Shown: piece after piece, positions 3 through 49,255 of the stretch
How positions within the stretch are numbered: the first letter of the stretch is position 1
Layout of the letters: each line of letters starts with the position of its first letter
From: Schmidtea nova
Lineage: Eukaryota
DNA: 64,000 nucleotides
Direction: 5' to 3'
Assembly: GCA_044892505.1 (NCBI GenBank)
Contig: CM097882.1
Coordinates: forward strand, 312,418,001-312,482,000
Made by a program: the position numbers and the translations under genes
The notes under the pieces: generated by a model
Told to the model about the DNA's origin: nothing
The model's input: the letters and a program-made list of their open reading frames with translations, nothing else
Databases searched by the model: none

Positions 3-1898
3 ATAATTATTAAAAATAATAAAAAATCTGTTAAAATTATAGAACCTAATAAAACAACTAAACAGAAGTATGATAAATTTGAATTTAAAAATCTGGTTCG
101 TATTTTAACGAAAAGGGAACGCCAGAAAATCTTGAATGCCTTCCCTGCTTTAATACAACTAATTAAAAAGAAAGAATCACAGAGTAAATATTTTGAAATT
201 AATAAATTTCTTTCGAGCAAAGATTTTAATGTGAATCACTTGAATTTAATTAATTTTGATTATTTTTTCTATAGAAATTGTAATCTTTGTGTATCTTTAA
301 AATTGAACAACGCTCCTGTCATTTCATCAGCACCAAAACCTGTTGTTTTAAAATCTATTAAATTAATTGACCATAATATCGTCAAAATAAATTCTGAAAT
401 CCCTGACTTTGTTCGAGCTCCAATGTCAATTCGAAGATTTTTATTCAATCTTTCGCACGATCTTTCAAACACTGTTTCCATCAAGGATGAGAAACACAGG
501 GGAAATAAAATAAATAACATTCTTACTTCAATGAAACATAAACAACAATTACCAGATTATTTAATAAAATCAAACATTAAATACGAAAATGGTGAGTTCT
601 TATTATTAGATTTGACTAACGATAAAATCAAATTGAACGACGATAATAACTTGATAAAATCAAATTTTTCTGAACTTACTAGAAGTCAGATTAAAAATCT
701 TTACTATTCTTATCCTTCTCTTAAGGAAGTTTGTTTCGTTGAAAATCTTGAAACAAGATCATCATCCGTTAGTAAAATTATCGAATCTTTAAAGTTAATT
801 AATGAATTTCCAAAAAATATCATTTTTAAAGAGGGTAAATTTTATCAGTCTGATAAAAGAACAATCTCACCTAGTAGTTCTCCTGACATAATGTTCAACC
901 TAGGTCTTTTTAATTTGGCTAGTATGAGTAGAAAAGATTGTGAATTAAAATCCATTTTAGAGAAGACTGGTTGTGACTTTAAAATAGTTGAAATAATATT
1001 CTACCTCAACTATTTAGGCTTGACTCAATCTTTAGAATTTTGCAAAAATCAAACTTATTCCGATTATGTGAGGAATTACGTCTGTAATTGCTGCTTGATA
1101 AACTCACTCTGTAGTATTGCTGATGTTGATTCGCTTTCATCTGAAGATTTTGAGGGTTGGGCGACCGAAATTGTTCAGAAAATCCCAGTTTCTTCCTATT
1201 ACTTCAATAGCTGCCAGGAAAAGCTTTTAAAGCTGAAGCAATGGGACATTTCAACTAAAATCAAAAGAATCCATAACGTTATTTCACCTGAAATAATATC
1301 TTATTTAAATAACTTTCTTGACTCTGTAGACGTAAAATTTCCATCTAAGTCTCAACAACATAATATTCTAATTAAATTAATGAAAGCTATCAATGACATT
1401 AAAATTTTTGATGACATACACGGAAATAAAGCAAAAAGACTTGTTTACTTTTTGCTAAGAGATGCCAAGAAATATTTGAATAAAAATCAACGATTCAGAT
1501 TATTTGAATCGAGCAATAAATATTGCACTTCAGAGATGGAGAATATAATTTCAGTAATAATTGAGAACCTTACCAAAGTTACTGACCATGAAGTTACTAC
1601 TCCTGAAATCACAGTTGAAGAAACGCCAATTGAAATAACTTGTGATCCTGAACCTATCGTCTTGATTAAGGAAATAAACTGTTTAAAATGTAACAATATC
1701 ATCGAAAAATGCATTCTTGTTAGAGATGGAACAAACGTCAACATCTGTGAAAGCTGTCTATTTGACGCAATTACCTTTGAAAAGCCGATTCCTGAAGCTA
1801 CTAATTCGGATATCGAAGAAAATATAGAAACAAATTGTAAGAAATCTTGTCCAAGACCTAGAAAAACAGACAAGAAAACATCAACCAAAGCAAAATGA
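3..1898 (+). CDS. ORF1 of copy 1, 5'-partial (open from the window edge; the track's start at 132 is an internal TTG)
   Basis: Collinear with ORF1 of copy 2 at offset 8781; ends at TGA 1896-1898. Confidence 0.9.
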   Translation: MIIKNNKKSVKIIEPNKTTKQKYDKFEFKNLVRILTKRERQKILNAFPALIQLIKKKESQSKYFEINKFLSSKDFNVNHLNLINFDYFFYRNCNLCVSLKLNNAPVISSAPKPVVLKSIKLIDHNIVKINSEIPDFVRAPMSIRRFLFNLSHDLSNTVSIKDEKHRGNKINNILTSMKHKQQLPDYLIKSNIKYENGEFLLLDLTNDKIKLNDDNNLIKSNFSELTRSQIKNLYYSYPSLKEVCFVENLETRSSSVSKIIESLKLINEFPKNIIFKEGKFYQSDKRTISPSSSPDIMFNLGLFNLASMSRKDCELKSILEKTGCDFKIVEIIFYLNYLGLTQSLEFCKNQTYSDYVRNYVCNCCLINSLCSIADVDSLSSEDFEGWATEIVQKIPVSSYYFNSCQEKLLKLKQWDISTKIKRIHNVISPEIISYLNNFLDSVDVKFPSKSQQHNILIKLMKAINDIKIFDDIHGNKAKRLVYFLLRDAKKYLNKNQRFRLFESSNKYCTSEMENIISVIIENLTKVTDHEVTTPEITVEETPIEITCDPEPIVLIKEINCLKCNNIIEKCILVRDGTNVNICESCLFDAITFEKPIPEATNSDIEENIETNCKKSCPRPRKTDKKTSTKAK

Positions 1899-1964
1899 AG
1901 ATGTGTGCCTGCATCAGCTCAATCGTCTGCCATTCCCTCTAATGAGACTGATGCAGAGAGCACA
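1896..1964 (+). promoter_or_regulatory. Candidate UGA readthrough signal (stop + stem-loop), copy 1
   Basis: TGA, 5-nt spacer AGATG, then TGTGC-CTGCATCAG-CTCA (1904-1921) pairing with TGAG-a-CTGATGCAG-aga-GCACA (1943-1964). Confidence 0.65.
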
Positions 1965-4900
1965 ACTAAAAATAATATTTCAACTATCGACAATCGTGAT
2001 CCTGAAGTGTGGTTTTCTGATAATGATATTGATTGGTATCTTGAAAACCACATTGATAATCCAATGCATGGATATATTAAATGCTTTATAGTAAATATCA
2101 TCTGTTCTAACATCACAGAAGATATTGTTGAAATTCCACCATCTATTAGCAATGCTGAAATTGTATTTTGTCCACTCAACATTAACAATTCGCACTGGAT
2201 TCTTTTTGTTTATAGTAAGAAAATGTTATCTTCTTACTTTATTGACCCAATCCTTGCAAACAGACAAAAGCCAATCAATAAACAAATGGCTCAGAGAATT
2301 AACCTAAAACTGAATAGATTTTTTAATCTAAATATATCTGTGTCCCGACATCCACACAAACATCTTGAATATCAAAATAACAGCTTTGATTGTGGCCCAT
2401 TTACGTGTGCTTATGCTGTGATTATCAGTAAAGATTTGAACAGCTTTCCAAATGGGTTCATAGAGAAAATTCGTACCAGTGTGCATGAAAATCAAAATCG
2501 TATGCAAATAACCGAATCCACCTTATTCGCTGGTACTAACTCCAAGATGGACATGACCAAAATAAATATCAAGAAAGCCCTTGCAAAAAAGAAAGTCATC
2601 ACCAACACCTCAGATATGACCAAAGTATTGAACACTCAAAAACCGTGTGTGTCATCAATAATTAGTAAATATTACGAAAGTAATTCTAAAATAACAGTCT
2701 TATCTGCCGAACTAACTTTAAACCTAATTGCACAAAATACCTCCTTCATAGCTGATAATGTCACTTTCAAGCAGTTCAAAGGAATCGATCATGTTATAAG
2801 TATCATTCCTAAATTTAACGATTGGTGTCTCTTTGTCTATTCGAATAAACTTGACAGGAGCTACATGTTCGACTTCAATTATCGAAACATTGATGAAAGG
2901 CTAATTGAAATTGGTGAAAAGATAACTGAATATCTGAATCAATTCACTCTTGTTTCTAAAATAAAATTCACACCTCATCATAGAATTTCTCATCCAACAT
3001 TTCATTCTTACGATGATCAATATTTTGCAAGTTCTTTTATTGTATTTTTTGAGAAACTTGTCTTTGAAAGAATACTGGACAATGATAAGGTTTATGACTC
3101 ATTAAGTGCTCTAAAATATCAGTCTTGTAAAGATCTTTCTCCTAGCTTAAGTTTCATTAATGGTAAAATATCCGACAAAATTATTGAGGAATATTTTGCT
3201 AGCCTAAACTTATCGACCAAATATATTCTTCTAAACACAACAATGTGTACTGCGCTTTCAGATGATTGCACTGAATACTTGAAAGACTTTGTAAACATTG
3301 AGTGCATGATGAAGGCTACTATAATCTTTGTAATCATTTCTCCTCCAAGAGCCAACGACTTGCTCATGGTTATTGATTACGACGCTGATGAGCACTATTT
3401 ATTAAGCCCAGTCACTAATGACTTGTTCGTTATGACTGAAGGATTCTGCTATAAATTACTAATTAAAATTAATGAGATTAGAGAGAGCACAGGTCGTTCC
3501 TTGAAATCGCGTAATTGTCGACATGACGTTAAAGGTTCTGGCTTATTTAGTAGGTTATTAATCTGTGCCTTTATTAAATATTATGCATTTGACCGATCTC
3601 TAGAAAATATCAATCTTCATGAAATTGGCAAAATTATCTACTCACTTGTGCCATTAGTTGATAAAAATGATAATGCTGAGGAAGAAAGACGACTAAAATC
3701 AAAAGCTGTAAACTCTTTAAAACTAAATTTAAAACAGCGAATAGAAAAAGCCAATAATCTTATAATTTCACTTGAACACGCCAGTATTGATGAAATCATA
3801 AGTGGCATTCTTTCAAATATTCCTCGTCTTAAAGATTTGAACACCGATCACATTCGTACACCATATTTAGGTACTAAAGTAGAAAAAGCTAGAAAATTCA
3901 AAAATTCCACTGAATTTCTGTCAAACATGAAAAAGACTGTGTATAGGATTTTGGGTAACAACACAGAATCAATTGCACCTCCTTTTCAGGAAATTATTGA
4001 CACTTTCAGTCATCCTGATACATTACCTAGAAATTGGGAAAACATCTTTAAATTCACTAAGAGTTCTAAATTTAGTCTTGAATTAAATCCAATGACACCT
4101 AAAGAAATCCTTTCAAGTCTTTGCAAAGCTGACAACACTTCTCCAGGTCTTGATAATGTTTGTTATAAAGATCTTTTGCTATTAGACCCTGAATGTAAAT
4201 TGCTAGCTTTTCTGTACAATAAAATCCTAAAATTAGACATTATTCCTACAAGTTGGAAATCATTTAAAACCATACTAATCCCTAAACCAGATAAAAATGG
4301 CCAATATCATAAAATATATTCTTGGCGACCAATTGCCTTATTATCTGTCATTTACAAAGTCTTCGCTTCAGTTTTGGCAAATCGTCTAAGCTTATGGATA
4401 AGAAATAATTCCATGTTACACATTGGCCAAAAGGGTGGTTCGGAGTACGAAGGATGTATTGAACACAACTCTATTCTTTCTGCTATCGTCGAACATTCAA
4501 AATACAGCAAGTCTTCACCTTTAACAATAGCTTGGCTAGACATCAAAGATGCCTTCGGAAGTGTTCCACATGACTACATGTGGACACTGTTAAAACACAT
4601 AAATGTTAGTGATAGGTTTGTAGGAATTTTAAAACTGCTCTATACTGATACAAGCTCGTTTTATTGTTGCAATAAAATGCAGACACCGGATATTCCAATA
4701 AAGAAAGGAGTTAAACAAGGTTGTCCGATCTCAATGATATTGTTTGCAATAGCTATTAACCCAGTACTTGAGTCTATTAATCTATCAAACGTTAATCCTT
4801 TTACGATTGGAACATCTCCGGTACAGGTGTTGGCTTATGCGGATGATATCGCACTTATCGCGACAAATACCTCTGATCTGCAAATACTCATAAACGTTGC

Positions 4901-6515
4901 TGTAAACACCGCTAAAACAATTGGATTTGAATATCGTCCAGAAAAGTGCGCTTATATGCAATACCCTAAAATAGAAACTGTAAGCGAGATTTCTGTCAAC
5001 AACGTTCTTATAAAAAAGATTGCAACAAATGAATTTTACCAATACTTGGGAGTACCAATAGGTGACAATAATGACCAAAGTCCCTATGAAATTCTAAGCA
5101 AAGTAATTGAAGACACAAAGAAAATAGCAAATTCTGATCTTTACGGCTGGCAAAAACTTAAAGCGTATAAGGTCTTTCTGCATTCTCGCTTGATTTTTCC
5201 ATTTAGAACTAGGGAAATCAAAACAAGTTCTTTAGCTGATTCGAGTAAAAATTCAAAATTAAATGTAAATAATACGAGTATTTTGAGGAGTCATCTTAGA
5301 AAAATATTGCACTTGCCACACTACTCTGAGATTAGCTATTTTTATAATTCTACTGAAAACGGCGGTGCAGGCTGCATAGACTTACTTGACGAGTATCATA
5401 CACAGACAATCGTGTACTTTTTCCGCTTGTTAACATCAACGTGCGAATATTCGAAAAAGATAAATACTGACTCGCTTTTATTTGTCACAAGTCCGAGACT
5501 CGGAATCAAAAATCCAGTTCTTAAACAAAGTTTAGAATGGATAAATGGAAAAGACAGCAAGAAAAACAACAGTGGTTGCAAAACTCGATTTTATCGGTTG
5601 CGATCATCCATTGCTTACTTTTCTAAAGTTCACAACATTAAATTGTTATTTGAAACAGTGAAAGGGAATCCTTCTATCCGGATAACCACTACACTTAAGG
5701 GAACACGTATATTATTACCAACATTAAGAAAAGCCTTGTCAATGATTTTACATTCAGCTCTCCAGGATTCGTATCTCGAGAAATGGGAGAATAGCAATCA
5801 TAATAATCTGCTTGTATCTGCGATTAAACTCTGTCCACTTGTCAACAAGCTTATTTTCCGCAGTGATTTGACAGAATTTGAATGGAGATTCGTCCATCGA
5901 GCAAGAACGAATACATTATCAATATTTGCGAAGCCATATAAAACTGGCGAAAATCGTCTTTGTCGTAGATGTAAGCTTGAAGACGAGACTTTATCACACG
6001 TTCTTCAAACTTGTAAAATGAACAAATCTTTGGCAACTAGTCGACATAACGCTTGCTTAGAAAAAATAAAAAGCGAGTTGAAAGATCCAAACTTGTTAGT
6101 TGTTGCGGATCATAAATGTTCCCTAGTACCGACATCAACTGAACGCGTTGATTTAATAATAACCAATAATGATAAAAAGACCATATTATTGGTAGACATG
6201 AAATGCCCAATCGATTCGGTGCCCAACTTTGACTTGGCTGATAAAAAAAACATAGAAAAGTATGATAAACTAAAATCGGAAATTAAAATAGCCAAACCCG
6301 ATTATAAAGTTGAGTTGTTTACCTGCATCATAGGCTCATTAGGATCCATTGAAATTAAAACACCTGATCTTTTAGTAAAAATGGGCGTAAAAGAAAATAA
6401 AGTAAAACGTCTGATGAAAGAGTGTGCAATTAGCAATATTGCGCACTCGGCCAAAATTTGGTACTTTCATACCAATGGCTTTCTTCCAGATAATATAAGA
6501 CAAACTTTTAAATAA
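1905..6515 (+). CDS. ORF2: Ulp1-like protease(s) + reverse transcriptase + CCHC + restriction-like endonuclease, copy 1 (track start is GTG; in frame with ORF1)
   Basis: SHW(H97)..FID(D114)..QNNSFDCG(Q157,C163); WRPIALL, LDIKDAFGSVPH, GVKQGCP, YADD(978-981), YQYLG; CRRC-x8-H-x4-C(1353-1370), RHN, RVD..DMK. Confidence 0.95.
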   Translation: MPASAQSSAIPSNETDAESTTKNNISTIDNRDPEVWFSDNDIDWYLENHIDNPMHGYIKCFIVNIICSNITEDIVEIPPSISNAEIVFCPLNINNSHWILFVYSKKMLSSYFIDPILANRQKPINKQMAQRINLKLNRFFNLNISVSRHPHKHLEYQNNSFDCGPFTCAYAVIISKDLNSFPNGFIEKIRTSVHENQNRMQITESTLFAGTNSKMDMTKINIKKALAKKKVITNTSDMTKVLNTQKPCVSSIISKYYESNSKITVLSAELTLNLIAQNTSFIADNVTFKQFKGIDHVISIIPKFNDWCLFVYSNKLDRSYMFDFNYRNIDERLIEIGEKITEYLNQFTLVSKIKFTPHHRISHPTFHSYDDQYFASSFIVFFEKLVFERILDNDKVYDSLSALKYQSCKDLSPSLSFINGKISDKIIEEYFASLNLSTKYILLNTTMCTALSDDCTEYLKDFVNIECMMKATIIFVIISPPRANDLLMVIDYDADEHYLLSPVTNDLFVMTEGFCYKLLIKINEIRESTGRSLKSRNCRHDVKGSGLFSRLLICAFIKYYAFDRSLENINLHEIGKIIYSLVPLVDKNDNAEEERRLKSKAVNSLKLNLKQRIEKANNLIISLEHASIDEIISGILSNIPRLKDLNTDHIRTPYLGTKVEKARKFKNSTEFLSNMKKTVYRILGNNTESIAPPFQEIIDTFSHPDTLPRNWENIFKFTKSSKFSLELNPMTPKEILSSLCKADNTSPGLDNVCYKDLLLLDPECKLLAFLYNKILKLDIIPTSWKSFKTILIPKPDKNGQYHKIYSWRPIALLSVIYKVFASVLANRLSLWIRNNSMLHIGQKGGSEYEGCIEHNSILSAIVEHSKYSKSSPLTIAWLDIKDAFGSVPHDYMWTLLKHINVSDRFVGILKLLYTDTSSFYCCNKMQTPDIPIKKGVKQGCPISMILFAIAINPVLESINLSNVNPFTIGTSPVQVLAYADDIALIATNTSDLQILINVAVNTAKTIGFEYRPEKCAYMQYPKIETVSEISVNNVLIKKIATNEFYQYLGVPIGDNNDQSPYEILSKVIEDTKKIANSDLYGWQKLKAYKVFLHSRLIFPFRTREIKTSSLADSSKNSKLNVNNTSILRSHLRKILHLPHYSEISYFYNSTENGGAGCIDLLDEYHTQTIVYFFRLLTSTCEYSKKINTDSLLFVTSPRLGIKNPVLKQSLEWINGKDSKKNNSGCKTRFYRLRSSIAYFSKVHNIKLLFETVKGNPSIRITTTLKGTRILLPTLRKALSMILHSALQDSYLEKWENSNHNNLLVSAIKLCPLVNKLIFRSDLTEFEWRFVHRARTNTLSIFAKPYKTGENRLCRRCKLEDETLSHVLQTCKMNKSLATSRHNACLEKIKSELKDPNLLVVADHKCSLVPTSTERVDLIITNNDKKTILLVDMKCPIDSVPNFDLADKKNIEKYDKLKSEIKIAKPDYKVELFTCIIGSLGSIEIKTPDLLVKMGVKENKVKRLMKECAISNIAHSAKIWYFHTNGFLPDNIRQTFK

Positions 6516-6870
6516 ATAATTATATATATATATAAATATTTGCTTTTTAAACTCTGTAAATAAAAATTAAAGTAAATATTTTGTAAAGTAATTTTTGTAT
6601 TAAATATCCAATCTTTTTAATCTGATAAATTGTCTTTGAGAGTTATTAAATTGGGAGACCAAGTATTCTGCAACGTATGTCACTTATTCTAGACTTATCA
6701 ACTTCAAAAGAATACAGTCGCAAAGCTGGATGACGAAATCCAAAGAACCAGAAACTTCCATTCAGATTGAACAATTATATTTTGACTGTGATTGTTTAGG
6801 GACTAATCCATGTTGATTAGATAATCTGTAAAAAAAATATGTCAAACTTGTTATATTTAATAAATGTTTA
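6516..6870 (+). other. 355-nt 3' UTR of the element (same in all copies; 352 nt in copy 5), AATAAA at 6859-6864, no poly(A) tail
   Basis: Lies between the ORF2 TAA and the tRNA junction; repeated at each copy. Confidence 0.9.
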
Positions 6871-6925
6871 TTATCACGTCTGCCTAACACGCAGAAGGTC
6901 CCCGGTTCGATCCCGGGTCGAACCA
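6871..6925 (+). pseudogene. 5'-truncated tRNA-Val(AAC), nt 19-73, disrupted by element copy 1
   Basis: TTATCACG...TCGAACCA directly after the element end; nt 1-18 absent. Confidence 0.95.
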
Positions 6926-7105
6926 AATTTTTCTCAATTCATTATTTGACTTTTATTATATTTGCAACTCTTTTTTTAATTCATAACGCAATTTTGTTGT
7001 TGAATTCTCTACTTTGTACATAAATTTTATTCAAGTGAATTCAGTACATTTTGTCAAGGTAATTCGAAAATCAAACATGCACAACAATTGTTAGTTGAAA
7101 CTGTC

Positions 7106-7178
7106 GGTTCGATGGTGTAGCGGTTATCACGTCTGCCTAACACGCAGAAGGTCCCCGGTTCGATCCCGGGTCGAACCA
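7106..7178 (+). tRNA. trnV: tRNA-Val(AAC)
   Basis: Acceptor GGTTCGA/TCGAACC, anticodon arm TCTGC-CTAACAC-GCAGA, T arm CCCGG-TTCGATC-CCGGG, A73; A34 (inosine-type) anticodon indicates a eukaryote. Confidence 0.97.
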
Positions 7179-7937: not shown

Positions 7938-8045
7938 AATTTTTCTCAATTCATTATTTGACTTTTATTATATTTGCAACTCTTTTTTTAAGTGTTGATA
8001 TATATATTGTAAATTTTAACGATTGATAAATTCTTTCAAGGTTCG

Positions 8046-10679
8046 ATGACTCAATCACCTGCTGCTCAGTCAACTGCTGCTGATGTAATGACTCAGTCTA
8101 TTGCAAATCAGTCAACTGTGACGAAGCAATATGAATTAGAAAACATTCTCAAATATCAAATTTCCAGTTTGCAATGTTTTCAATCGATTTTGGATTATTT
8201 TTCTCAACTAAATGGTGGAAATCTCGCTACTGCCTCAGTTCTATCTGATGCGAATGCAAGTCAACGGAGTTCTTTCGATCAAGGATCTAAAATTTCTCCA
8301 AACCAATCTGATAATATGCCACTTTCTTATGCTGATATTGAGACTAAATTCACTAAATCAAAGGATTTACTTATTGTCAAGCGCCTGGATTCATTGGAGT
8401 CTCAATTTATGAATATGGCTGAAAAGTTAGATTATTTGGTTTCTTTGTTTAATGGCTCTGTTGATGATTTATCAGATTTTCCTAAAGTAAATGAAAATAA
8501 TTTAAATAATAATCCTTTCAATAAAAATAAAGTTTTTGATATCAAAGATAAATTAATTGTAAATAATGTAGTTTTAGATAAATCAAATATTTCAGAATTT
8601 ATTGAAAATAATATTGCTAAAATTCCTAATAGTTTAATTGATGTAAATAATAAAATGTGTAATTCAAATAATAAATTTCTAAATAACCCTAATAAAGAGA
8701 ATGTTAAACATTTTAATAATCCCAAAGATACATCTTCAATTGATTTGACTAACGATAAAATTATGCCAAATGAAAACATAGAAATAATTATTAAAAATAA
8801 TAAAAAATCTGTTAAAATTATAGAACTTTATAAAACAACTAAACAGAAGTATGATAAATTTGAATTTAAAAGTCTGGTTCGTATTTTAACGAAAAGGGAA
8901 CGCCAGAAAATCTTGAATGCCTTCCCTGCTTTAATACAACTAATTAAAAAGAAAGAATCACAGAGTAAATATTTTGAAATTAATAAATTTCTTTCGAGCA
9001 AAGATTTTAATGTGAATCACTTGAATTTAATTAATTTTGATTATTTTTTCTATAGAAATTGTAATCTTTGTGTATCTTTAAAATTGAACAACGCTCCTGT
9101 CATTTCATCAGCACCAAAACCTGTTGTTTTAAAAACTATTAAATTAATTGACCATAATATCGTCAAAATAAATTCTGAAATCCCTGACTTTGTTCGAGCT
9201 CCAATGTCAATTCGAAGATTTTTATTCAATCTTTCGCACGATCTTTCAAACACTGTTTCCATCAAGGATGAGAAACACAGGGGAAATAAAATAAATAACA
9301 TTCTTACTTCAATGAAACATAAACAACAATTACCAGATTATTTAATAAAATCAAACATTAAATACGAAAATGGTGAGTTCTTATTATTAGATTTGACTAA
9401 CGATAAAATCAAATTGAACGACGATAATAACTTGATAAAATCAAATTTTTCTGAACTTACTAGAAGTCAGATTAAAAATCTTTACCATTCTTATCCTTCT
9501 CTTAAGGAAGTTTGTTTCGTTGAAAATCTTGAAACAAGATCATCATCCGTTAGTAAAATTATCGAATCTTTAAAGTTAATTAATGAATTTCCAAAAAATA
9601 TCATTTTTAAAGAGGGTAAATTTTATCAGTCTGATAAAAGAACAATCTCACCTAGTAGTTCTCCTGACATAATGTTCAACCTTGGTCTTTTTAATTTAGC
9701 TAGTATGAGTAGAAAAGATTGTGAATTAAAATCCATTTTAGAGAAGACTGGTTGTGACTTTAAAATAGTTGAAATAATATTCTACCTCAACTATTTAGGC
9801 TTGACTCAATCTTTAGAATTTTGCAAAAATCAAACTTATTCTGATTATGTGAGGAATTACGTCTGCAATTGCTGCTTGATAAACTCACTCTGTAGTATTG
9901 CTGATGTTGATTCGCTTTCATCTGAAGATTTTGAGGGTTGGGCGACCGAAATTGTTCAGAAAATCCCAGTTTCTTCCTATTACTTCAATAGCTGCCAGGA
10001 AAAGCTTTTAAAGCTGAAGCAATGGGACATTTCAACTAAAATCAAAAGAATCCATAACGTTATTTCACCTGAAATAATATCTTATTTAAATAACTTTCTT
10101 GACTCTGTAGACGTAAAATTTCCATCTAAGTCTCAACAACATAATATTCTAATTAAATTAATGAAAGCTATCAATGACATTAAAATTTTTGATGACATAC
10201 ACGGAAATAAAGCAAAAAGACTTGTTTACTTTTTGCTAAGAGATGCCAAGAAATATTTGAATAAAAATCAACGATTCAGATTATTTGAATCGAGCAATAA
10301 ATATTGCACTTTAGAGATGGAGAATATAATTTCAGTAATAATTGAGAACCTTACCAAAGTTACTGACCATGAAGTTACTACTCCTGAAATCACAGTTGAA
10401 GAAACGCCAATTGAAATAACTTGTGATCCTGAACCTATCGTCTTGATTAAGGAAATAAACTGTTTAAAATGCAACAATATCATCGAAAAATGCATTCTTG
10501 TTAGAGATGGAACAAACGTCAACATCTGTGAAAGCTGTCTATTTGACGCAATTACCTTTGAAAAGCCGATTCCTGAAGCTACTAATTCGGATATCGAAGA
10601 AAATATAGAAACAAATTGTAAGAAATCTTGTCCAAGACCTAGAAAAACAGACAAGAAAACATCAACCAAAGCAAAATGA
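8046..10679 (+). CDS. ORF1 (877 aa), unknown family; putative coiled coil, Asn-rich tract, C4 zinc finger, basic C-tail
   Basis: Long ORF kept in all copies; CLKC-x18-CESC at 10461-10538. Confidence 0.92.
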   Translation: MTQSPAAQSTAADVMTQSIANQSTVTKQYELENILKYQISSLQCFQSILDYFSQLNGGNLATASVLSDANASQRSSFDQGSKISPNQSDNMPLSYADIETKFTKSKDLLIVKRLDSLESQFMNMAEKLDYLVSLFNGSVDDLSDFPKVNENNLNNNPFNKNKVFDIKDKLIVNNVVLDKSNISEFIENNIAKIPNSLIDVNNKMCNSNNKFLNNPNKENVKHFNNPKDTSSIDLTNDKIMPNENIEIIIKNNKKSVKIIELYKTTKQKYDKFEFKSLVRILTKRERQKILNAFPALIQLIKKKESQSKYFEINKFLSSKDFNVNHLNLINFDYFFYRNCNLCVSLKLNNAPVISSAPKPVVLKTIKLIDHNIVKINSEIPDFVRAPMSIRRFLFNLSHDLSNTVSIKDEKHRGNKINNILTSMKHKQQLPDYLIKSNIKYENGEFLLLDLTNDKIKLNDDNNLIKSNFSELTRSQIKNLYHSYPSLKEVCFVENLETRSSSVSKIIESLKLINEFPKNIIFKEGKFYQSDKRTISPSSSPDIMFNLGLFNLASMSRKDCELKSILEKTGCDFKIVEIIFYLNYLGLTQSLEFCKNQTYSDYVRNYVCNCCLINSLCSIADVDSLSSEDFEGWATEIVQKIPVSSYYFNSCQEKLLKLKQWDISTKIKRIHNVISPEIISYLNNFLDSVDVKFPSKSQQHNILIKLMKAINDIKIFDDIHGNKAKRLVYFLLRDAKKYLNKNQRFRLFESSNKYCTLEMENIISVIIENLTKVTDHEVTTPEITVEETPIEITCDPEPIVLIKEINCLKCNNIIEKCILVRDGTNVNICESCLFDAITFEKPIPEATNSDIEENIETNCKKSCPRPRKTDKKTSTKAK

Positions 10680-16573: not shown

Positions 16574-19205
16574 ATGACTCAATCACCTGCTGCTCAGTCA
16601 ACTGCTGCTGATGTAATGACTCAGTATATTGCAAATCAGTCAACTGTGACGAAGAAATATGAATTAGAAAACATTCTCAAATATCAAATTTCCAGTTTGC
16701 AATGTTTTCAATCGATTTTGGATTATTTTTCTCAACTAAATGGTGGAAATCTCGCTACTGCCTCAGTTCTATCTGATGCGAATGCAAGTCAACGGAGTTC
16801 TTTCGATCAAGGATCTAAAATTTCTCCAAACCAATCTGATAATATGCCACTTTCTTATGCTGATATTGAGACTAAATTCACTAAATCAAAGGATTTACTG
16901 ATTGTCAAGCGCCTGGATTCATTGGAGTCTCAATTTATGAATATGGCTGAAAAGTTAGATTATTTGGTTTCTTTGTTTAATGGCTCTGTTGATGATTTAT
17001 CAGATTTTCCTAAAGTAAATGAAAATAATTTAAATAATAATCCTTTCAATAAAAATAAAGTTTTTGATATCAAAGATAAATTAATTGTAAATAATGTAGT
17101 TTTAGATAAATCAAATATTTCAGAATTTATTGAAAATAATATTGCTAAAATTCCTAATAGTTTAATTGATGTAAATAATAAAATGTGTAATTCAAATAAT
17201 AAATTTCTAAATAACCCTAATAAAGAGAATGTTAAACATTTTAATAATCCCAAAGAAACATCTTCAATTGATTTGACTAACGATAAAATTATGCCAAATG
17301 AAAACATAGAAATAATTATTAAAAATAATAAAAAATCTGTTAAAATTATAGAACCTAATAAAACAACTAAACAGAAGTATGATAAATTTGAATTTAAAAA
17401 TCTGGTTCGTATTTTAACGAAAAGGGAACGCCAGAAAATCTTGAATGCCTTCCCTGCTTTAATACAACTAATTAAAAAGAAAGAATCACAGAGTAAATAT
17501 TTTGAAATTAATAAATTTCTTTCGAGCAAAGATTTTAATGTGAATCACTTGAATTTAATTAATTTTGATTATTTTTTCTATAGAAATTGTAATCTTTGTG
17601 TATCTTAAATTGAACAACGCTCCTGTCATTTCATCAGCACCAAAACCTGTTGTTTTAAAAACTATTAAATTAATTGACCATAATATCGTCAAAATAAATT
17701 CTGAAATCCCTGACTTTGTTCGAGCTCCAATGTCAATTCGAAGATTTTTATTCAATCTTTCGCACGATCTTTCAAACACTGTTTCCATCAAGGATGAGAA
17801 ACACAGGGGAAATAAAATAAATAACATTCTTACTTCAATGAAACATAAACAACAATTACCAGATTATTTAATAAAATCAAACATTAAATACGAAAATGGT
17901 GAGTTCTTATTATTAGATTTGACTAACGATAAAATCAAATTGAACGACGATAATAACTTGATAAAATCAAATTTTTCTGAACTTACTAGAAGTCAGATTA
18001 AAGATCTTTACTATTCTTATCCTTCTCTTAAGGAAGTTTGTTTCGTTGAAAATCTTGAAACAAGATCATCATCCGTTAGTAAAATTATCGAATCTTTAAA
18101 GTTAATTAATGAATTTCCAAAAAATATCATTTTTAAAGAGGGTAAATTTTATCAGTCTGATAAAAGAACAATCTCACCTAGTAGTTCTCCTGACATAATG
18201 TTCAACCTAGGTCTTTTTAATTTGGCTAGTATGAGTAGAAAAGATTGTGAATTAAAATCCATTTTAGAGAAGACTGGTTGTGACTTTAAAATAGTTGAAA
18301 TAATATTCTACCTCAACTATTTAGGCTTGACTCAATCTTTAGAATTTTGCAAAAATCAAACTTATTCCGATTATGTGAGGAATTACGTCTGTAATTGCTG
18401 CTTGATAAACTCACTCTGTAGTATTGCTGATGTTGATTCGCTTTCATCTGAAGATTTTGAGGGTTGGGCGACCGAAATTGTTCAGAAAATCCCAGTTTCT
18501 TCCTATTACTTCAATAGCTGCCAGGAAAAGCTTTTAAAGCTGAAGCAATGGGACATTTCAACTAAAATCAAAAGAATCCATAACGTTATTTCACCTGAAA
18601 TAATATCTTATTTAAATAACTTTCTTGACTCTGTAGACGTAAAATTTCCATCTAAGTCTCAACAACATAATATTCTAATTAAATTAATGAAAGCTATCAA
18701 TGACATTAAAATTTTTGATGACATACACGGAAATAAAGCAAAAAGACTTGTTTACTTTTTGCTAAGAGATGCCAAGAAATATTTGAATAAAAATCAACGA
18801 TTCAGATTATTTGAATCGAGCAATAAATATTGCACTTCAGAGATGGAGAATATAATTTCAGTAATAATTGAGAACCTTACCAAAGTTACTGACCATGAAG
18901 TTACTACTCCTGAAATCACAGTTGAAGAAACGCCAATTGAAATAACTTGTGATCCTGAACCTATCGTCTTGATTAAGGAAATAAACTGTTTAAAATGTAA
19001 CAATATCATCGAAAAATGCATTCTTGTTAGAGATGGAACAAACGTCAACATCTGTGAAAGCTGTCTATTTGACGCAATTACCTTTGAAAAGCCGATTCCT
19101 GAAGCTACTAATTCGGATATCGAAGAAAATATAGAAACAAATTGTAAGAAATCTTGTCCAAGACCTAGAAAAACAGACAAGAAAACATCAACCAAAGCAA
19201 AATGA
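16574..19205 (+). pseudogene. ORF1 of copy 3 split by a 2-bp deletion (premature TAA 17606-17608)
   Basis: tatcttaaattg versus tatctttaaaattg in the other copies; track shows 344-aa and 546-aa pieces. Confidence 0.85.
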
Positions 19206-40779: not shown

Positions 40780-40908
40780 AATTTTTCTCAATTCATTATT
40801 TGACTTTTATTATATTTGCAACTCTTTTTTTAATTCATAACGCAATTTTGTTGTTGAATTCTCTACTTTGTACATAAATTTTATTCAAGTGAATTCTTTC
40901 AAGGTTCG

Positions 40909-43542
40909 ATGACTCAATCACCTGCTGCTCAGTCAACTGCTGCTGATGTAATGACTCAGTCTATTGCAAATCAGTCAACTGTGACGAAGCAATATGAATT
41001 AGAAAACATTCTCAAATATCAAATTGCTAACTTGCAATATTTTCAATCGATTTTGGATTATTTTTCTCAACTAAATGGTGGAAATCTCGCTACTGCCTCA
41101 GTTCTATCTGATGCGAATGCAAGTCAACGGAGTTCTTTCGATCAAGGATCTAAAATTTCTCAAAACCAATCTGATAATATGCCACTTTCTTATGCTGATA
41201 TTGAGACTAAATTCACTAAATCAAAGGATTTACTGATTGTCAAGCGCCTGGATTCATTGGAGTCTCAATTTATGAATATGGCTGAAAAGTTAGATTATTT
41301 GGTTTCTTTGTTTAATGGCTCTGTTGATGATTTATCAGATTTTCCTAAAGTAAATGAAAATAATTTAAATAATAATCCTTTCAATAAAAATAAAGTTTTT
41401 GATATCAAAGATAAATTAATTGTAAATAATGTAGTTTTAGATAAATCAAATATTTCAGAATTTATTGAAAATAATATTGCTAAAATTCCTAATAGTTTAA
41501 TTGATGTAAATAATAAAATGTGTAATTCAAATAATAAATTTCTAAATAACCCTAATAAAGAGAATGTTAAACATTTTAATAATCCCAAAGATACATCTTC
41601 AATTGATTTGACTAACGATAAAATTATGCCAAATGAAAACATAGAAATAATTATTAAAAATAATAAAAAATCTGTTAAAATTATAGAACCTTATAAAACA
41701 ACTAAAGAGAAGTATGATAAATTTGAATTTAAAAGTCTGGTTCGTATTTTAACGAAAAGGGAACGCCAGAAAATCTTGAATGCCTTCCCTGCTTTAATAC
41801 AACTAATTAAAAAGAAAGAATCACAGAGTAAATATTTTGAAATTAATAAATTTCTTTCGAGCAAAGATTTTAATGTGAATCACTTGAATTTAAATAATTT
41901 TGATTATTTTTTCTATAGAAATTGTAATCTTTGTGTATCTTTAAAATTGAACAACGCTCCTGTCATTTCATCAGCACCAAAACCTGTTGTTTTAAAAACT
42001 ATTAAATTAATTGACCATAATATCGTCAAAATAAATTCTGAAATCCCTGACTTTGTTCGAGCTCCAATGTCAATTCGAAGATTTTTATTCAATCTTTCGC
42101 ACGATCTTTCAAACACTGTTTCCATCAAGGATGAGAAACACAGGGGAAATAAAATAAATAACATTCTTACTTCAATGAAACATAAACAACAATTACCAGA
42201 TTATTTAATAAAATCAAACATTAAATACGAAAATGGTGAGTTCTTATTATTAGATTTGACTAACGATAAAATCAAATTGAACGACGATAATAACTTGATA
42301 AAATCAAATTTTTCTGAACTTACTAGAAGTCAGATTAAAAATCTTTACTATTCTTATCCTTCTCTTAAGGAAGTTTGTTTCGTTGAAAATCTTGAAACAA
42401 GATCATCATCCGTTAGTAAAATTATCGAATCTTTAAAGTTAATTAATGAATTTCCAAAAAATATCATTTTTAAAGAGGGTAAATTTTATCAGTCTGATAA
42501 AAGAACAATCTCACCTAGTAGTTCTCCTGACATAATGTTCAATCTTGGTCTTTTTAATTTGGCTAGTATGAGTAGAAAAGATTGTGAATTAAAATCCATT
42601 TTAGAGAAGACTGGTTGTGACTTTAAAATAGTTGAAATAATATTCTACCTCAACTATTTAGGCTTGACTCAATCTTTAGAATTTTGCAAAAATCAAACTT
42701 ATTCTGATTATGTGAGGAATTACGTCTGTAATTGCTGCTTGATAAACTCACTCTGTAGTATTGCTGATGTTGATTCGCTTTCATCTGAAGATTTTGAGGG
42801 TTGGGCGACCGAAATTGTTCAGAAAATCCCAGTTTCTTCCTATTACTTCAATAGCTGCCAGGAAAAGCTTTTAAAGCTGAAGCAATGGGACATTTCAACT
42901 AAAATCAAAAGAATCCATAACGTTATTTCACCTGAAATAATATCTTATTTAAATAACTTTCTTGACTCTGTAGACGTAAAATTTCCATCTAAGTCTCAAC
43001 AACATAATATTCTAATTAAATTAATGAAAGCTATCAATGACATTAAAATTTTTGATGACATACACGGAAATAAAGCAAAAAGACTTGTTTACTTTTTGCT
43101 AAGAGATGCCAAGAAATATTTGAATAAAAATCAACGATTCAGATTATTTGAATCGAGCAATAAATATTGCACTTTAGAGATGGAGAATATAATTTCAGTA
43201 ATAATTGAGAACCTTACCAAAGTTACTGACCATGAAGTTACTACTCCTGAAATCACAGTTGAAGAAACGCCAATTGAAATAACTTGTGATCCTGAACCTA
43301 TCGTCTTGATTAAGGAAATAAACTGTTTAAAATGTAACAATATCATCGAAAAATGCATTCTTGTTAGAGATGGAACAAACGTCAACATCTGTGAAAGCTG
43401 TCTATTTGACGCAATTACCTTTGAAAAGCCGATTCCTGAAGCTACTAATTCGGATATCGAAGAAAATATAGAAACAAATTGTAAGAAATCTTGTCCAAGA
43501 CCTAGAAAAACAGACAAGAAAACATCAACCAAAGCAAAATGA
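40909..43542 (+). CDS. ORF1 (877 aa), copy 6
   Basis: ORF track. Confidence 0.92.
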   Translation: MTQSPAAQSTAADVMTQSIANQSTVTKQYELENILKYQIANLQYFQSILDYFSQLNGGNLATASVLSDANASQRSSFDQGSKISQNQSDNMPLSYADIETKFTKSKDLLIVKRLDSLESQFMNMAEKLDYLVSLFNGSVDDLSDFPKVNENNLNNNPFNKNKVFDIKDKLIVNNVVLDKSNISEFIENNIAKIPNSLIDVNNKMCNSNNKFLNNPNKENVKHFNNPKDTSSIDLTNDKIMPNENIEIIIKNNKKSVKIIEPYKTTKEKYDKFEFKSLVRILTKRERQKILNAFPALIQLIKKKESQSKYFEINKFLSSKDFNVNHLNLNNFDYFFYRNCNLCVSLKLNNAPVISSAPKPVVLKTIKLIDHNIVKINSEIPDFVRAPMSIRRFLFNLSHDLSNTVSIKDEKHRGNKINNILTSMKHKQQLPDYLIKSNIKYENGEFLLLDLTNDKIKLNDDNNLIKSNFSELTRSQIKNLYYSYPSLKEVCFVENLETRSSSVSKIIESLKLINEFPKNIIFKEGKFYQSDKRTISPSSSPDIMFNLGLFNLASMSRKDCELKSILEKTGCDFKIVEIIFYLNYLGLTQSLEFCKNQTYSDYVRNYVCNCCLINSLCSIADVDSLSSEDFEGWATEIVQKIPVSSYYFNSCQEKLLKLKQWDISTKIKRIHNVISPEIISYLNNFLDSVDVKFPSKSQQHNILIKLMKAINDIKIFDDIHGNKAKRLVYFLLRDAKKYLNKNQRFRLFESSNKYCTLEMENIISVIIENLTKVTDHEVTTPEITVEETPIEITCDPEPIVLIKEINCLKCNNIIEKCILVRDGTNVNICESCLFDAITFEKPIPEATNSDIEENIETNCKKSCPRPRKTDKKTSTKAK

Positions 43543-48749: not shown

Positions 48750-48822
48750 GGTTCGATGGTGTAGCGGTTATCACGTCTGCCTAACACGCAGAAGGTCCCC
48801 GGTTCGATCCCGGGTCGAACCA
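48750..48822 (+). tRNA. trnV: tRNA-Val(AAC)
   Basis: Identical unit. Confidence 0.97.
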
Positions 48823-49002
48823 AATTTTTCTCAATTCATTATTTGACTTTTATTATATTTGCAACTCTTTTTTTAATTCATAACGCAATTTTGTTGTTGA
48901 ATTCTCTACTTTGTACATAAATTTTATTCAAGTGAATTCAGTACATTTTGTCAAGGTAATTCGAAAATCAAACATGCACAACAATTGTTAGTTGAAACTG
49001 TC

Positions 49003-49075
49003 GGTTCGATGGTGTAGCGGTTATCACGTCTGCCTAACACGCAGAAGGTCCCCGGTTCGATCCCGGGTCGAACCA
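49003..49075 (+). tRNA. trnV: tRNA-Val(AAC)
   Basis: Identical unit. Confidence 0.97.
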
Positions 49076-49255
49076 AATTTTTCTCAATTCATTATTTGAC
49101 TTTTATTATATTTGCAACTCTTTTTTTAATTCATAACGCAATTTTGTTGTTGAATTCTCTACTTTGTACATAAATTTTATTCAAGTGAATTCAGTACATT
49201 TTGTCAAGGTAATTCGAAAATCAAACATGCACAACAATTGTTAGTTGAAACTGTC

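What the first reader, a model, noticed from the sequence alone, without database searches (positions are those of the whole stretch)
2010..3593. Three tandem Ulp1/C48-like domains: one catalytically intact, two apparent pseudo-proteases
Seen: domain 1 (aa 36-176) WFSDNDIDWYL..IVFCPLNINNSHWILFVYSKKMLSSYFIDP..QNNSFDCG has His97/Asp114/Gln157/Cys163. Domain 2 (aa ~248-388) HVISIIPKFNDWCLFVYSNKLDRSYMFDF..YDDQYFASSFIV matches W-x-LFVYS-x-K-x3-SY-x2-D but lacks the His and Cys. Domain 3 (aa ~421-563) KISDKIIEEYF..IIFVIISPPRANDLLMVIDYDADEHYLLSP..SRLLICAF is more degenerate. The ~140-aa length repeats with similar spacing. Across 7 copies these 560 aa show one private change (G543D), while copies 1 and 2 differ by 5 synonymous changes here, so the dead domains look constrained. 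Inference: inactive CE-clan folds could bind SUMO/Ub-like modifiers. The NeSL-type elements I know have a single protease domain.
Basis: partly seen in the sequence, partly recalled or inferred. Interest (0 to 1): 0.75.

Follow-up and report, generated by a model that had tools for sequence, protein, structure and literature searches.

The report
Retrotransposon protease plus two dead copies
A jumping gene that inserts into valine-tRNA genes encodes one working SUMO-protease-like domain followed by two conserved, catalytically dead copies of the same fold, an arrangement I found in no paper I searched and whose purpose is still unknown.

Summary
Window 2010-3593 encodes the N-terminal third of ORF2 of a non-LTR retrotransposon. 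Seven full copies sit in a 253-bp tandem array of tRNA-Val(AAC) genes.

- **Domain 1 (aa 32-197)** is a Pfam Peptidase_C48 domain. His97, Asp114, Gln157 and Cys163 are invariant in every relative that covers those columns.
- **Domains 2 (aa ~245-395) and 3 (aa ~410-583)** have no Pfam or PDB sequence hit. Profile-profile comparison links them to domain 1 and to each other (E 1e-6 to 1e-7). AlphaFold models (pLDDT 87 and 83) match only CE-clan proteases in the PDB, with Ulp1 TM 0.72 for domain 3.
- **Both lack the catalytic residues.** Domain 3 carries Ser where the Cys should be.
- **Both are constrained.** They are 40-61% identical between elements whose synonymous sites are saturated, against 12-28% for the linker.

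The three-domain layout defines a small clade known only from metagenome and read-archive assemblies. ORF2 is in frame with ORF1 behind a conserved TGA and stem-loop, so it is probably made as a readthrough fusion. A Gly-rich motif 43-49 residues after the catalytic Cys is a likely self-cleavage site. What the dead domains do is untested. I rate it a new variant of a known kind.

The parts
1899..6515 (+). ORF2 of copy 1: 1536 codons after the TGA, with no ATG near its start. Layout is protease, two dead protease folds, RT, CCHC, restriction-like endonuclease. The same ORF starts at 10686, 19212, 27234, 35509, 43549 and 55471.
1896..1898 (+). In-frame TGA separating ORF1 from ORF2. Candidate programmed readthrough stop.
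   Evidence: Identical in 7 of 7 copies. In-frame TGA in all seven related loci: L001-L003 and L005-L008.
1909..1956 (+). Stem-loop 10 nt after the TGA. Arms are 1909-1919 and 1946-1956, with a 9-bp core CTGCATCAG / CTGATGCAG.
   Evidence: RNAalifold gives 11 pairs, 4 with compensatory changes. Four-fold sites of codons 1-31 are 62-86% identical against 32% expected by chance.
1998..2495 (+). Domain 1 (aa 32-197): intact Ulp1/C48 protease. His97 is at 2193-2195, Asp114 at 2244-2246, Gln157 at 2373-2375 and Cys163 at 2391-2393.
   Evidence: PF02902 scores 32.9 bits against a cutoff of 20.7. SENP2 and Ulp1 are the PDB sequence hits. The tetrad is invariant in every relative that covers those columns.
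2496..2636 (+). Variable, basic linker (aa 198-244, net charge about +6).
   Evidence: 12-28% identity and dN 0.8-1.25 between elements. Charge.
2526..2537 (+). FAGT (aa 208-211). This is the position of the family's conserved Gly-rich motif and a candidate self-cleavage site. It is degenerate in this element.
   Evidence: GGG, GSG, GKG or GPG lies 40-49 residues after the catalytic Cys in every lineage examined; two members of the P0014 cluster (P0046, P0049) read GPV. The window has AGT at offset 46.
2637..3089 (+). Domain 2 (aa 245-395): dead CE-clan fold. D306 stands at the His position, D323 at the Asp position and D371 at the Cys position.
   Evidence: BLASTP against domain 1 gives E 9e-5. 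hhalign gives 94% probability. AlphaFold pLDDT is 86.8. The Foldseek top 50 are all CE-clan proteases. Catalytic columns.
3132..3653 (+). Domain 3 (aa 410-583): dead CE-clan fold. N484 stands at the His position, S501 at the Asp position and S549 at the Cys position.
   Evidence: hhalign against domain 1 covers 152 columns at E 4.6e-6. AlphaFold pLDDT is 82.6. Foldseek top hit is Ulp1 1euv_A at E 7e-6, TM 0.72, rmsd 3.4 A. Catalytic columns.
3522..3566 (+). Pseudo-active-site loop of domain 3, H540-D-V-K-G-S-G-L-F-S-R-L-L-I-C554. It is the best conserved stretch of domain 3. The private G544D change of copy 4 falls here.
   Evidence: H540, S545, G546, F548, S549, L552 and C554 are invariant in alignment A5. 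Family columns. G544D.
4278..5057 (+). Reverse transcriptase domain (aa 792-1051).
   Evidence: PF00078 at E 1.6e-29.
5961..6206 (+). CCHC motif and restriction-like endonuclease motifs (C1353-x2-C1356...H1365...C1370; D1416; D1431-x-K1433).
   Evidence: These residues are invariant in A5. The motif assignment is by reading, not by a profile hit.
6871..7178 (+). 3' junction with the target. The element ends at 6870 and tRNA-Val resumes at about tRNA nt 19. The first complete downstream tRNA-Val(AAC) is at 7106-7178.
   Evidence: The junction is identical in all 7 copies. tRNA calls in 10 and 11.

Best explanation
**Shown.** The stretch encodes the N-terminal module of the pol-like ORF2 of a tRNA-Val-specific non-LTR retrotransposon. 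The element has the NeSL/Utopia-like architecture: RT, CCHC and a restriction-like endonuclease. The module is a tandem triplication of one CE-clan (Ulp1/C48) fold.
- Domain 1 keeps the His-Asp-Gln-Cys catalytic set and is the only plausible enzyme.
- Domains 2 and 3 are internal paralogues that lost the catalytic residues.
- Both dead domains are kept under purifying selection across a clade of elements.

**Inferred.**
1. ORF2 has no start codon of its own. It follows ORF1 in frame behind a conserved TGA and stem-loop, so it is made as an ORF1-ORF2 readthrough fusion, like Gag-Pol.
2. Domain 1 sits 35-70 residues after that junction. I propose that it processes the fusion in cis at the Gly-rich motif (GGG or G-x-G; AG-T in this element) at the C-terminal edge of its own fold. 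Other CE-clan proteases cut after Gly-Gly or Ala-Gly.
3. That cut would leave domains 2 and 3 as the N-terminus of the RT-endonuclease protein.
4. There I propose they act as non-catalytic binding modules. The most conserved part of domain 3 is its former active-site loop, with Ser in place of the nucleophile. This suggests it still holds a peptide tail, either the element's own cleaved product or a host ubiquitin-like protein.
For: **Fold and paralogy**
- Pfam C48 on domain 1 only.
- BLASTP and hhalign links among the three domains.
- Cross-hits of domain HMMs on the other domains at 7-25 bits.
- AlphaFold pLDDT 86.8 and 82.6, with Foldseek hits exclusively to CE-clan proteases.

**Catalytic status**
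- Domain 1: H/D/Q/C invariant in every row that covers the column (13-16 of 16).
- Domain 2: never His at the His position; Cys at the Cys position in 2 of 12.
- Domain 3: Ser at the Cys position in 12 of 16.
- The window's domain 3 has N484, S501 and S549.

**Constraint**
- Domain 2 is 46-56% and domain 3 40-61% identical between the window, L001 and L002.
- dN is 0.28-0.57 while four-fold sites sit near the chance level of 0.32 in most comparisons.
- The linker shows dN 0.8-1.25.

**Clade**
- The three-domain architecture forms a 100/100 clade.
- The one member lacking domain 2 (P0009) is nested inside it.

**Readthrough**
- In-frame TGA in all eight elements examined.
- A covarying stem-loop follows it.

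**Cleavage motif**
- The Gly motif lies at offset 40-49 from the catalytic Cys in a linker that is otherwise unalignable.
Against: - No biochemical evidence exists for readthrough, cleavage or binding.
- In this very element the Gly motif is reduced to F-A-G-T. A Ulp1/SENP-type enzyme, which needs Gly-Gly, might not cut it.
- No second cleavage site that would free the protease from ORF1 was found.
- The Trp after the catalytic His, invariant in domain 1, is absent from domain 3 and from 5 of 12 domain-2 sequences. A canonical Gly-Gly tunnel is therefore probably gone.
- The alignments behind the AlphaFold models are shallow (9 and 12 sequences).
- Within-window variation alone does not show constraint on domains 2 and 3 (P 0.11).
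Confidence: 0.6

Rival explanations
1. Host-directed enzyme. Domain 1 is a deSUMOylase, deNEDDylase or deubiquitinase that acts on host proteins. It might strip SUMO from silencing or repair factors at the insertion site. Domains 2 and 3 would be readers that bind SUMO- or ubiquitin-like proteins and bring the enzyme or the RT complex to modified chromatin.
For: - The closest solved folds for all three domains are SUMO and NEDD8 proteases, not viral processing proteases.
- Ser replaces the nucleophile in domain 3, as in the SENP1 C603S and SENP2 C548S mutants that were crystallised bound to SUMO (PDB 2g4d and 5aek, listed).
- The pseudo-active-site loop is the best conserved part of domain 3.
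- Ulp1 and OTU domains in DNA transposons, which make no polyprotein, have been proposed to act on host ubiquitin-like pathways (PMC2836005).
Against: - It does not explain the position-conserved Gly motif at the edge of domain 1.
- It does not explain why the protease sits directly after a readthrough junction.
- The Trp after the catalytic His is lost in domain 3.
- No binding data exist.
- The two readings are not exclusive. Adenovirus protease, for example, both processes precursors and removes ubiquitin (my own knowledge).
Confidence: 0.25
2. Structural or regulatory pseudo-enzymes. Domains 2 and 3 bind no Gly-Gly tail. They might instead serve as a scaffold or spacer in the ribonucleoprotein. 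They might be a partner that activates or restrains domain 1. They might replace the zinc-finger and Myb target-binding module that R2-type elements carry upstream of RT.
For: - ORF2 has no zinc-finger or Myb motif between the protease and RT.
- The only CxxC...CxxC motif lies at the ORF1 C-terminus. A cut at the Gly motif would leave it on the other fragment.
- The architecture is plastic. Domain 2 was lost in P0009 and P0008, and domain 3 is reduced to a remnant in P0043. That fits accessory modules.
Against: - Domains 2 and 3 are neutral to acidic (pI 4.7-8.9, net charge -10 to +4), which is unlike typical DNA-binding modules.
- Conservation in domain 3 peaks at the former active-site loop rather than being spread over a surface. 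That points to a retained groove.
Confidence: 0.13
3. Decaying relics. Domains 2 and 3 are leftovers of a tandem duplication with no function of their own. Their apparent conservation only reflects the youth of the copies.
For: - Within the window the seven copies are about 99.5% identical. Domains 2 and 3 alone show only 2 synonymous and 1 non-synonymous change (P 0.11).
- Some lineages have lost one of the two domains.
Against: - Between elements with saturated synonymous sites, domains 2 and 3 keep 40-61% identity. dN is as low as for the active domain 1, while the adjacent linker has drifted to 12-28%.
- The ORF is intact in every full-length relative.
- The models are confident, compact folds.
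Confidence: 0.02

Closest known systems
NeSL-1 (Caenorhabditis) and Utopia-1_TSP (Trichinella): restriction-like-endonuclease non-LTR retrotransposons with an N-terminal Ulp1-like protease (PMC4640811)
   Same: - A Ulp1-like cysteine protease lies upstream of RT.
- A zinc motif and a restriction-like endonuclease lie at the C-terminus.
- Insertion is site-specific, into a multicopy small-RNA gene.
   Different: - Only one protease domain is described for them. Here it is followed by two dead paralogues.
- The target here is tRNA-Val, not the spliced-leader or U2 gene.
- ORF2 lies behind an in-frame TGA.
- I could not place the RT with reference NeSL or Utopia sequences, because none were available.
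tRNA-gene-specific NeSL relatives: NeSL-1_TV (tRNA-Pro, Trichomonas), LIN15_SM and LIN25_SM (tRNA-Arg and tRNA-Glu, planaria) (PMC4640811)
   Same: They insert site-specifically into tRNA genes, and the hosts are AT-rich genomes.
   Different: - The tRNA target differs.
- Their protease content is not described in the text I read.
CE-clan processing proteases of DNA viruses: adenovirus adenain, African swine fever virus pS273R, poxvirus I7L
   Same: - They share the fold. I7L and pS273R appear among the Foldseek hits.
- They cut their own precursor proteins after Gly-Gly-X or Ala-Gly-X (my own knowledge). That matches the GGG or AG-T motif position here.
   Different: - They are single active domains with no tandem dead copies.
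- The three domains here are structurally closer to cellular Ulp1, SENP and NEDP1 than to these viral enzymes.
Ulp1/SENP catalytic Cys-to-Ser mutants (SENP1 C603S in PDB 2g4d, SENP2 C548S in PDB 5aek)
   Same: Domain 3 carries Ser at the nucleophile position in 12 of 16 family members. These mutants were crystallised bound to SUMO (descriptions).
   Different: - Domain 3 also lacks the Trp after the His position in all members.
- In the window element it has lost His and Asp/Asn as well.
- Binding is not shown.
Ulp1 domains in DNA transposons: Ginger1 and Mutator-like elements (PMC2836005)
   Same: A mobile element carries a C48 domain of unknown role.
   Different: - They are DNA transposons.
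- Ginger1 transposases carry a single Ulp1 domain at the C-terminus.
- No tandem dead copies are described.

Membership tests
Peptidase C48 (Ulp1/SENP), clan CE | Match to the Pfam PF02902 profile above the gathering score | tested here: met
   Met for domain 1 only: 32.9 bits against a 20.7 cutoff. Domains 2 and 3 give no Pfam hit even at E 10. Their family profiles find no protease in the PDB sequences: nothing for domain 3 and one uncharacterised protein at E 0.81 for domain 2.
Peptidase C48 (Ulp1/SENP), clan CE | Catalytic His, Asp and Cys plus the oxyanion Gln in the canonical order | tested here: met
   Domain 1 has H97, D114, Q157 and C163, invariant in every family row that covers the column.
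Peptidase C48 (Ulp1/SENP), clan CE: domains 2 and 3 as active members | Catalytic His, Asp and Cys present | tested here: not met
   Domain 2 has D306, D323 and D371. Domain 3 has N484, S501 and S549. Across the family, domain 2 never has His, and domain 3 has Ser or Asn at the Cys position. They share the fold but are not enzymes of this family.
Peptidase C48 (Ulp1/SENP), clan CE | CE-clan three-dimensional fold | tested here: met
   Domain 2 model: pLDDT 86.8, top 50 PDB hits all CE-clan, TM up to 0.65. Domain 3 model: pLDDT 82.6, Ulp1 1euv_A at TM 0.72 and rmsd 3.4 A.
Peptidase C48 (Ulp1/SENP), clan CE | Peptidase or isopeptidase activity after Gly-Gly | not testable with these tools
   Needs an enzyme assay.
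NeSL/Utopia-type non-LTR retrotransposon with restriction-like endonuclease | Reverse transcriptase domain | tested here: met
   PF00078 at E 1.6e-29, aa 792-1051.
NeSL/Utopia-type non-LTR retrotransposon with restriction-like endonuclease | C-terminal CCHC motif and PD-(D/E)xK-type endonuclease | tested here: inconclusive
   C1353, C1356, H1365, C1370, D1416, D1431 and K1433 are invariant in five family members. They fit the motif as I know it. No profile for this domain gave a hit, apart from a weak zf-RVT match.
NeSL/Utopia-type non-LTR retrotransposon with restriction-like endonuclease | Site-specific insertion into a multicopy RNA gene | tested here: met
   All seven copies join tRNA-Val(AAC) at the same nucleotide, about tRNA nt 19. 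They lie inside a 253-bp tandem tRNA array.
NeSL/Utopia-type non-LTR retrotransposon with restriction-like endonuclease | RT groups with reference NeSL or Utopia sequences in a phylogeny | not testable with these tools
   No named reference sequences could be fetched. The nearest named relatives are unannotated RT proteins of a turtle, a pseudoscorpion, a nematode, a bee and an entry labelled Em in EukProt, at 27-30% identity.
Programmed stop-codon readthrough (Gag-Pol type) | Downstream ORF in frame behind a single conserved stop, with no start codon of its own | tested here: met
   TGA in frame in all seven copies and in all seven related loci. The first in-frame ATG of ORF2 is at codon 54, inside the protease domain.
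Programmed stop-codon readthrough (Gag-Pol type) | Conserved RNA structure a few nucleotides after the stop | tested here: met
   An 11-pair stem starts 10 nt after the TGA. Four pairs show compensatory changes. Synonymous variation is suppressed in codons 1-31. Only six sequences were used, so support is modest.
Programmed stop-codon readthrough (Gag-Pol type) | Measured readthrough product | not testable with these tools
   Needs a reporter assay or proteomics.

The most novel reading that the evidence does not exclude
The element couples one active CE-clan protease to two pseudo-proteases that work as built-in readers of Gly-Gly tails. After the protease cuts the readthrough fusion at the Gly motif, domain 3 would clamp the new C-terminus or a host SUMO-like protein. 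Domain 3 would then be a natural Cys-to-Ser substrate trap. This would hold the ORF1-protease product and the RT-endonuclease together on the RNA, or tether the complex to SUMO-marked chromatin at tRNA genes. It would be a new use of pseudo-enzymes in retrotransposon assembly and targeting.
Probability: 0.2. Interest if true: 0.75.

Novelty: new variant of a known kind. Interest (0 to 1): 0.6.

Why it matters
Ulp1-like proteases have been known in NeSL-type retrotransposons for years, and their role has never been established. This family offers several testable handles at once:
- a protease placed right after a conserved readthrough junction;
- a position-conserved Gly motif that looks like its cleavage site;
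- two selectively maintained dead copies of the same fold, attached to the reverse transcriptase.

If the dead domains bind a cleaved tail or a host SUMO-like protein, this would be a clear natural case of pseudo-proteases recruited by a mobile element. It would also say what the protease in this whole group of elements is for. If they are only scaffolds, the finding remains a tidy example of duplication and inactivation. I know a similar pattern from RNA-virus polyproteins, but found no report of it for non-LTR elements.

Tried and rejected
- **Pfam, NCBIfam and PDB sequence searches.** Domains 2 and 3 gave no meaningful hit as single sequences or as family profiles. Sequence-to-library methods do not see these domains. 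Only profile-profile and fold comparison do.
- **Word-index protein search with aa 180-600.** It found nothing. The exhaustive HMMER search was needed to find the first 12 relatives.
- **Metagenome DNA scan with a domain-3 pattern.** The first attempt failed because no stretch was conserved enough. The second returned one locus, L004, which is an ABC-transporter ATPase and a chance match. I discarded it.
- **tRNA scans of the related contigs.** No tRNAs were found. The contigs end inside or just beyond the elements, so the targets of the relatives stay unknown.
- **Cluster look-up for names or organisms.** Every relative comes from unnamed metagenome or read-archive assemblies. The host of the window is therefore not identified. 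A parabasalid or planarian is only a guess, based on PMC4640811.
- **DNA-binding role for domains 2 and 3.** I consider it unlikely because the domains are neutral to acidic.
- **Compositional artefact of an AT-rich genome.** Rejected on the hhalign E-values and the confident, specific fold matches.
- **Literature search for tandem or inactive Ulp1 domains.** Nothing relevant was found. This is absence in the held library only.
Full report
**What the window is**

The 64-kb window is AT-rich (about 32% G+C) and contains no N. It holds seven full copies, and an eighth cut by the window end, of an element of about 7.7 kb.
- Each copy has ORF1 (877 aa) and ORF2 (1536 codons).
- Between the copies lie 34 tRNA-Val(AAC) genes in a 253-bp tandem repeat. 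One run of 19 units is uninterrupted, at 48750-53376.
- Every copy ends at the same nucleotide and is followed by tRNA-Val from about tRNA position 19. The element is therefore a site-specific insertion in this tRNA gene.
- ORF2 carries a reverse transcriptase domain (PF00078, E 1.6e-29, aa 792-1051).
- Its C-terminus has invariant C-C-H-C and D...D-x-K residues. These fit the restriction-like endonuclease of R2/NeSL-type elements as I know it.
- Kojima and Jurka (PMC4640811) describe NeSL families and Utopia-1_TSP with an N-terminal Ulp1-like protease. They also describe NeSL relatives that target tRNA genes in Trichomonas and planaria. This is the nearest described kind.

**Checking the observation**

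H97, D114, Q157 and C163 are correct.

The seven ORF2 copies differ at 36 positions, 24 synonymous and 12 non-synonymous.
- Inside aa 36-563 there are five synonymous sites. These are exactly the differences between copies 1 and 2.
- There is one private replacement in copy 4, which is G544D rather than G543D.
- The synonymous excess is significant for ORF2 as a whole (P 4e-9) and for aa 36-563 (P 0.0015).
- For domains 2 and 3 with their linkers it is only 2:1 (P 0.11).

**Are domains 2 and 3 really Ulp1-like?**

Library searches see only domain 1.
- Pfam Peptidase_C48 scores 32.9 bits against a cutoff of 20.7.
- SENP2 and Ulp1 are the best PDB sequence matches.
- Domains 2 and 3 give nothing, even as family profiles against PDB sequences.

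Domain 1 and domain 2 of the same protein align by BLASTP at E 9e-5, with 29% identity over 80 residues.

The word-index search of aa 180-600 came back empty. The exhaustive HMMER search then found 12 relatives, and further searches added more. Each full-length relative with a complete N-terminus has a single Pfam C48 hit followed by RT.

Using sub-alignments of the three domains from these relatives, hhalign gave:
- domain 2 against domain 1: 94.4% probability, E 9.3e-8;
- domain 3 against domain 1: 86.4%, E 4.6e-6, over 152 columns, which is almost the whole domain;
- domain 3 against domain 2: 92.9%, E 3.6e-7.

HMMs built from each domain also cross-hit the other domains at 7-25 bits. The domain-1 HMM covers the whole second domain of the distant relative P0014, whose sequence there reads D-S-G-P-L-I-C-G-Y where domain 1 has D-C-G-P-x-x-C-x-Y.

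AlphaFold models gave pLDDT 86.8 (pTM 0.83) for aa 236-405 and pLDDT 82.6 (pTM 0.82) for aa 405-590. Foldseek against the PDB returned only CE-clan proteases in the top 50 for both.
- Domain 2: NEDP1/Den1, Ulp1 and SENP1, 2, 3, 5 and 7. Bacterial CE effectors and poxvirus I7L rank lower. E is down to 2e-5 and TM up to 0.65.
- Domain 3: Ulp1 1euv_A first, at E 7e-6, TM 0.72 and rmsd 3.4 A over 173 columns.
- The viral library gave Ulp1-like proteases of large DNA viruses.

**Catalytic status**

- **Domain 1.** H97, W98, D114, P115, Q157, C163 and C168 are invariant in every one of the 16 rows that covers the column.
- **Domain 2.** His is never present. The Cys position holds D, P, I, W, L, C, T or K. 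The Asp position keeps D, N or E in 11 of 12. The Trp after the His position survives in 7 of 12.
- **Domain 3.** The family pattern is His (12 of 18), Asn (15 of 18) and Ser at the Cys position (12 of 16). It sits inside a strongly conserved loop, H-D-x-[KR]-G-S-G-[LF]-F-S-N-L-L-x-C.
- **The window's domain 3.** It has N484, S501 and S549, so all three triad positions are non-catalytic.
- The only private amino-acid change in the region, G544D in copy 4, falls on a conserved Gly of this loop.

**Constraint**

I compared the window with the two closest elements for which DNA was fetched, L001 and L002.
- Four-fold degenerate sites are mostly near the chance level. Identity in the domain regions is 0.12-0.57 against 0.32 expected, and dS is above 1.3 or saturated.
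- Yet domain 2 keeps 46-56% and domain 3 keeps 40-61% amino-acid identity, with dN of 0.28-0.57.
- That is similar to domain 1 (45-57%).
- The linker between domains 1 and 2 has 12-28% identity and dN of 0.8-1.25.

The dead domains are therefore under purifying selection.

**Distribution and history**

In an RT-region tree of 21 proteins, all elements with the three-domain layout form a 100/100 clade.
- P0009, which has domains 1 and 3 only, is nested in that clade as sister to a three-domain element (93/94). It lost domain 2 secondarily.
- A sister clade holds P0043 (domains 1 and 2 plus a remnant of the domain-3 loop) and P0014 (domain 1 plus one dead domain).
- Outside lie unannotated RT proteins of animals that show no C48 hit in the precomputed Pfam lists. 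A pair with a single protease domain (P0060, P0064) lies outside as well.
- Every member with more than one CE-fold domain comes from unnamed metagenome or read-archive assemblies. The host is unknown.

**Context that bears on mechanism**

- ORF1 and ORF2 are in the same frame, separated by one TGA (1896-1898). The first in-frame ATG of ORF2 is at codon 54, inside the protease domain.
- The same in-frame TGA is present in all seven related loci. It is followed by AGA, CGG, CTA or TGG.
- Ten nucleotides downstream, a stem of up to 11 pairs is conserved. Four pairs show compensatory changes.
- Synonymous sites of the first 31 codons are unusually conserved.

This is the signature of programmed readthrough. 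ORF2 would be made only as an ORF1-ORF2 fusion, with the protease domain starting about 35 residues after the junction.

A Gly-rich motif lies 40-49 residues after the catalytic Cys, at the C-terminal edge of the domain-1 fold.
- It is GGG in most lineages and GSG, GKG or GPG in others. Two members of the P0014 cluster read GPV.
- The surrounding linker is otherwise unalignable and varies from 7 to 43 residues in the eleven proteins measured.
- Glycine makes up only about 3-5% of these proteins.
- CE-clan proteases cut after Gly-Gly (Ulp1/SENP, adenain, pS273R) or Ala-Gly (poxvirus I7L). This is my own knowledge.
- In the window element the motif is F-A-G-T, in all seven copies.

**Best reading, and what is inference**

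*Shown:* three tandem CE-clan folds. The first is intact and the other two are dead. All three are conserved. The layout is specific to one clade of tRNA-gene-inserting elements.

*Inferred:*
- The protease processes the readthrough fusion in cis at the Gly motif.
- Domains 2 and 3 then form the N-terminus of the RT-endonuclease protein.
- They act there as non-catalytic binding modules.

The conserved former active-site loop of domain 3, with Ser at the nucleophile position, suggests it still holds a peptide tail. Laboratory SENP Cys-to-Ser mutants were crystallised in complex with SUMO (2g4d and 5aek). The tail could be the element's own cleaved product or a host ubiquitin-like protein.

A pure scaffold or target-binding role is less likely, because the domains are not basic. 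A relic without function is contradicted.

**Limits**

- The alignments behind the models are shallow.
- Domain 1 and the whole three-domain unit were not modelled.
- No reference NeSL or Utopia sequences were available for a formal clade assignment.
- The host is unidentified.
- No activity, cleavage, readthrough or binding has been measured.

**Verdict**

In the papers I could search, NeSL-type elements are described with a single protease domain, and nothing reports tandem dead Ulp1 domains. I rate it a new variant of a known kind, of moderate to good interest to people who work on mobile elements and pseudo-enzymes.

Noticed in passing
window 1896-1956, and the same place in the other six copies; L001, L002, L003, L005-L008: ORF1 and ORF2 are in one frame, separated by a single TGA in every family member examined. 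A conserved stem-loop starts 10 nt downstream, with compensatory changes in L007. Synonymous variation is suppressed in the first 31 codons of ORF2. This looks like programmed UGA readthrough giving a Gag-Pol-like fusion.
   Followed up: partly
window 6860-6880, 7992-8054, 40897-40920: All seven 3' junctions are identical, at about nt 19 of tRNA-Val. There are two kinds of 5' junction: the upstream repeat unit breaks off 127 or 190 nt after the preceding tRNA start. The copies with the 127-nt break carry about 42 extra nt of 5' leader. The ORF1 start codon lies in GGTTCGATG, which is identical to nt 1-9 of the tRNA.
   Followed up: partly
window 48750-53376: There is an uninterrupted run of 19 identical 253-bp units, each with one tRNA-Val(AAC). 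The unit at 49256 carries a single substitution, which lies inside the tRNA. Tandem arrays of a single tRNA gene at this density are unusual and might help to identify the host.
   Followed up: no
window 16574-19205 and 53506-55464: ORF1 of copy 3 has a 2-nt deletion, which splits it into two overlapping ORFs. ORF1 of copy 7 has an in-frame internal deletion of 675 nt (652 aa instead of 877). The ORF2 of both copies is intact. ORF1 itself has no Pfam or NCBIfam hit. It ends in a CxxC...CxxC motif.
   Followed up: partly
window 61621-64000: An eighth copy starts here and runs off the end of the window. Copy 1 is cut by the start of the window: its ORF1 begins at codon 246 of the reference.
   Followed up: yes
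proteins P0078, P0082 and P0159: More distant RT proteins found with the RT region carry other ubiquitin-system modules. Two have a USP-type hydrolase domain (PF00443). One has ubiquitin and a SUMO-like Rad60-SLD domain fused to RT and RNase H. Modules of the ubiquitin-like protein system may be a recurring theme in this part of the non-LTR world.
   Followed up: no
window 2496-2636 (aa 198-244): The linker just after the candidate cleavage motif is lysine-rich (net charge about +6). It is also basic in several relatives, for example KKKKKAKK in P0003. It could be a nuclear localisation signal or a nucleic-acid-binding tail at the new N-terminus. It is not basic in all members.
   Followed up: partly
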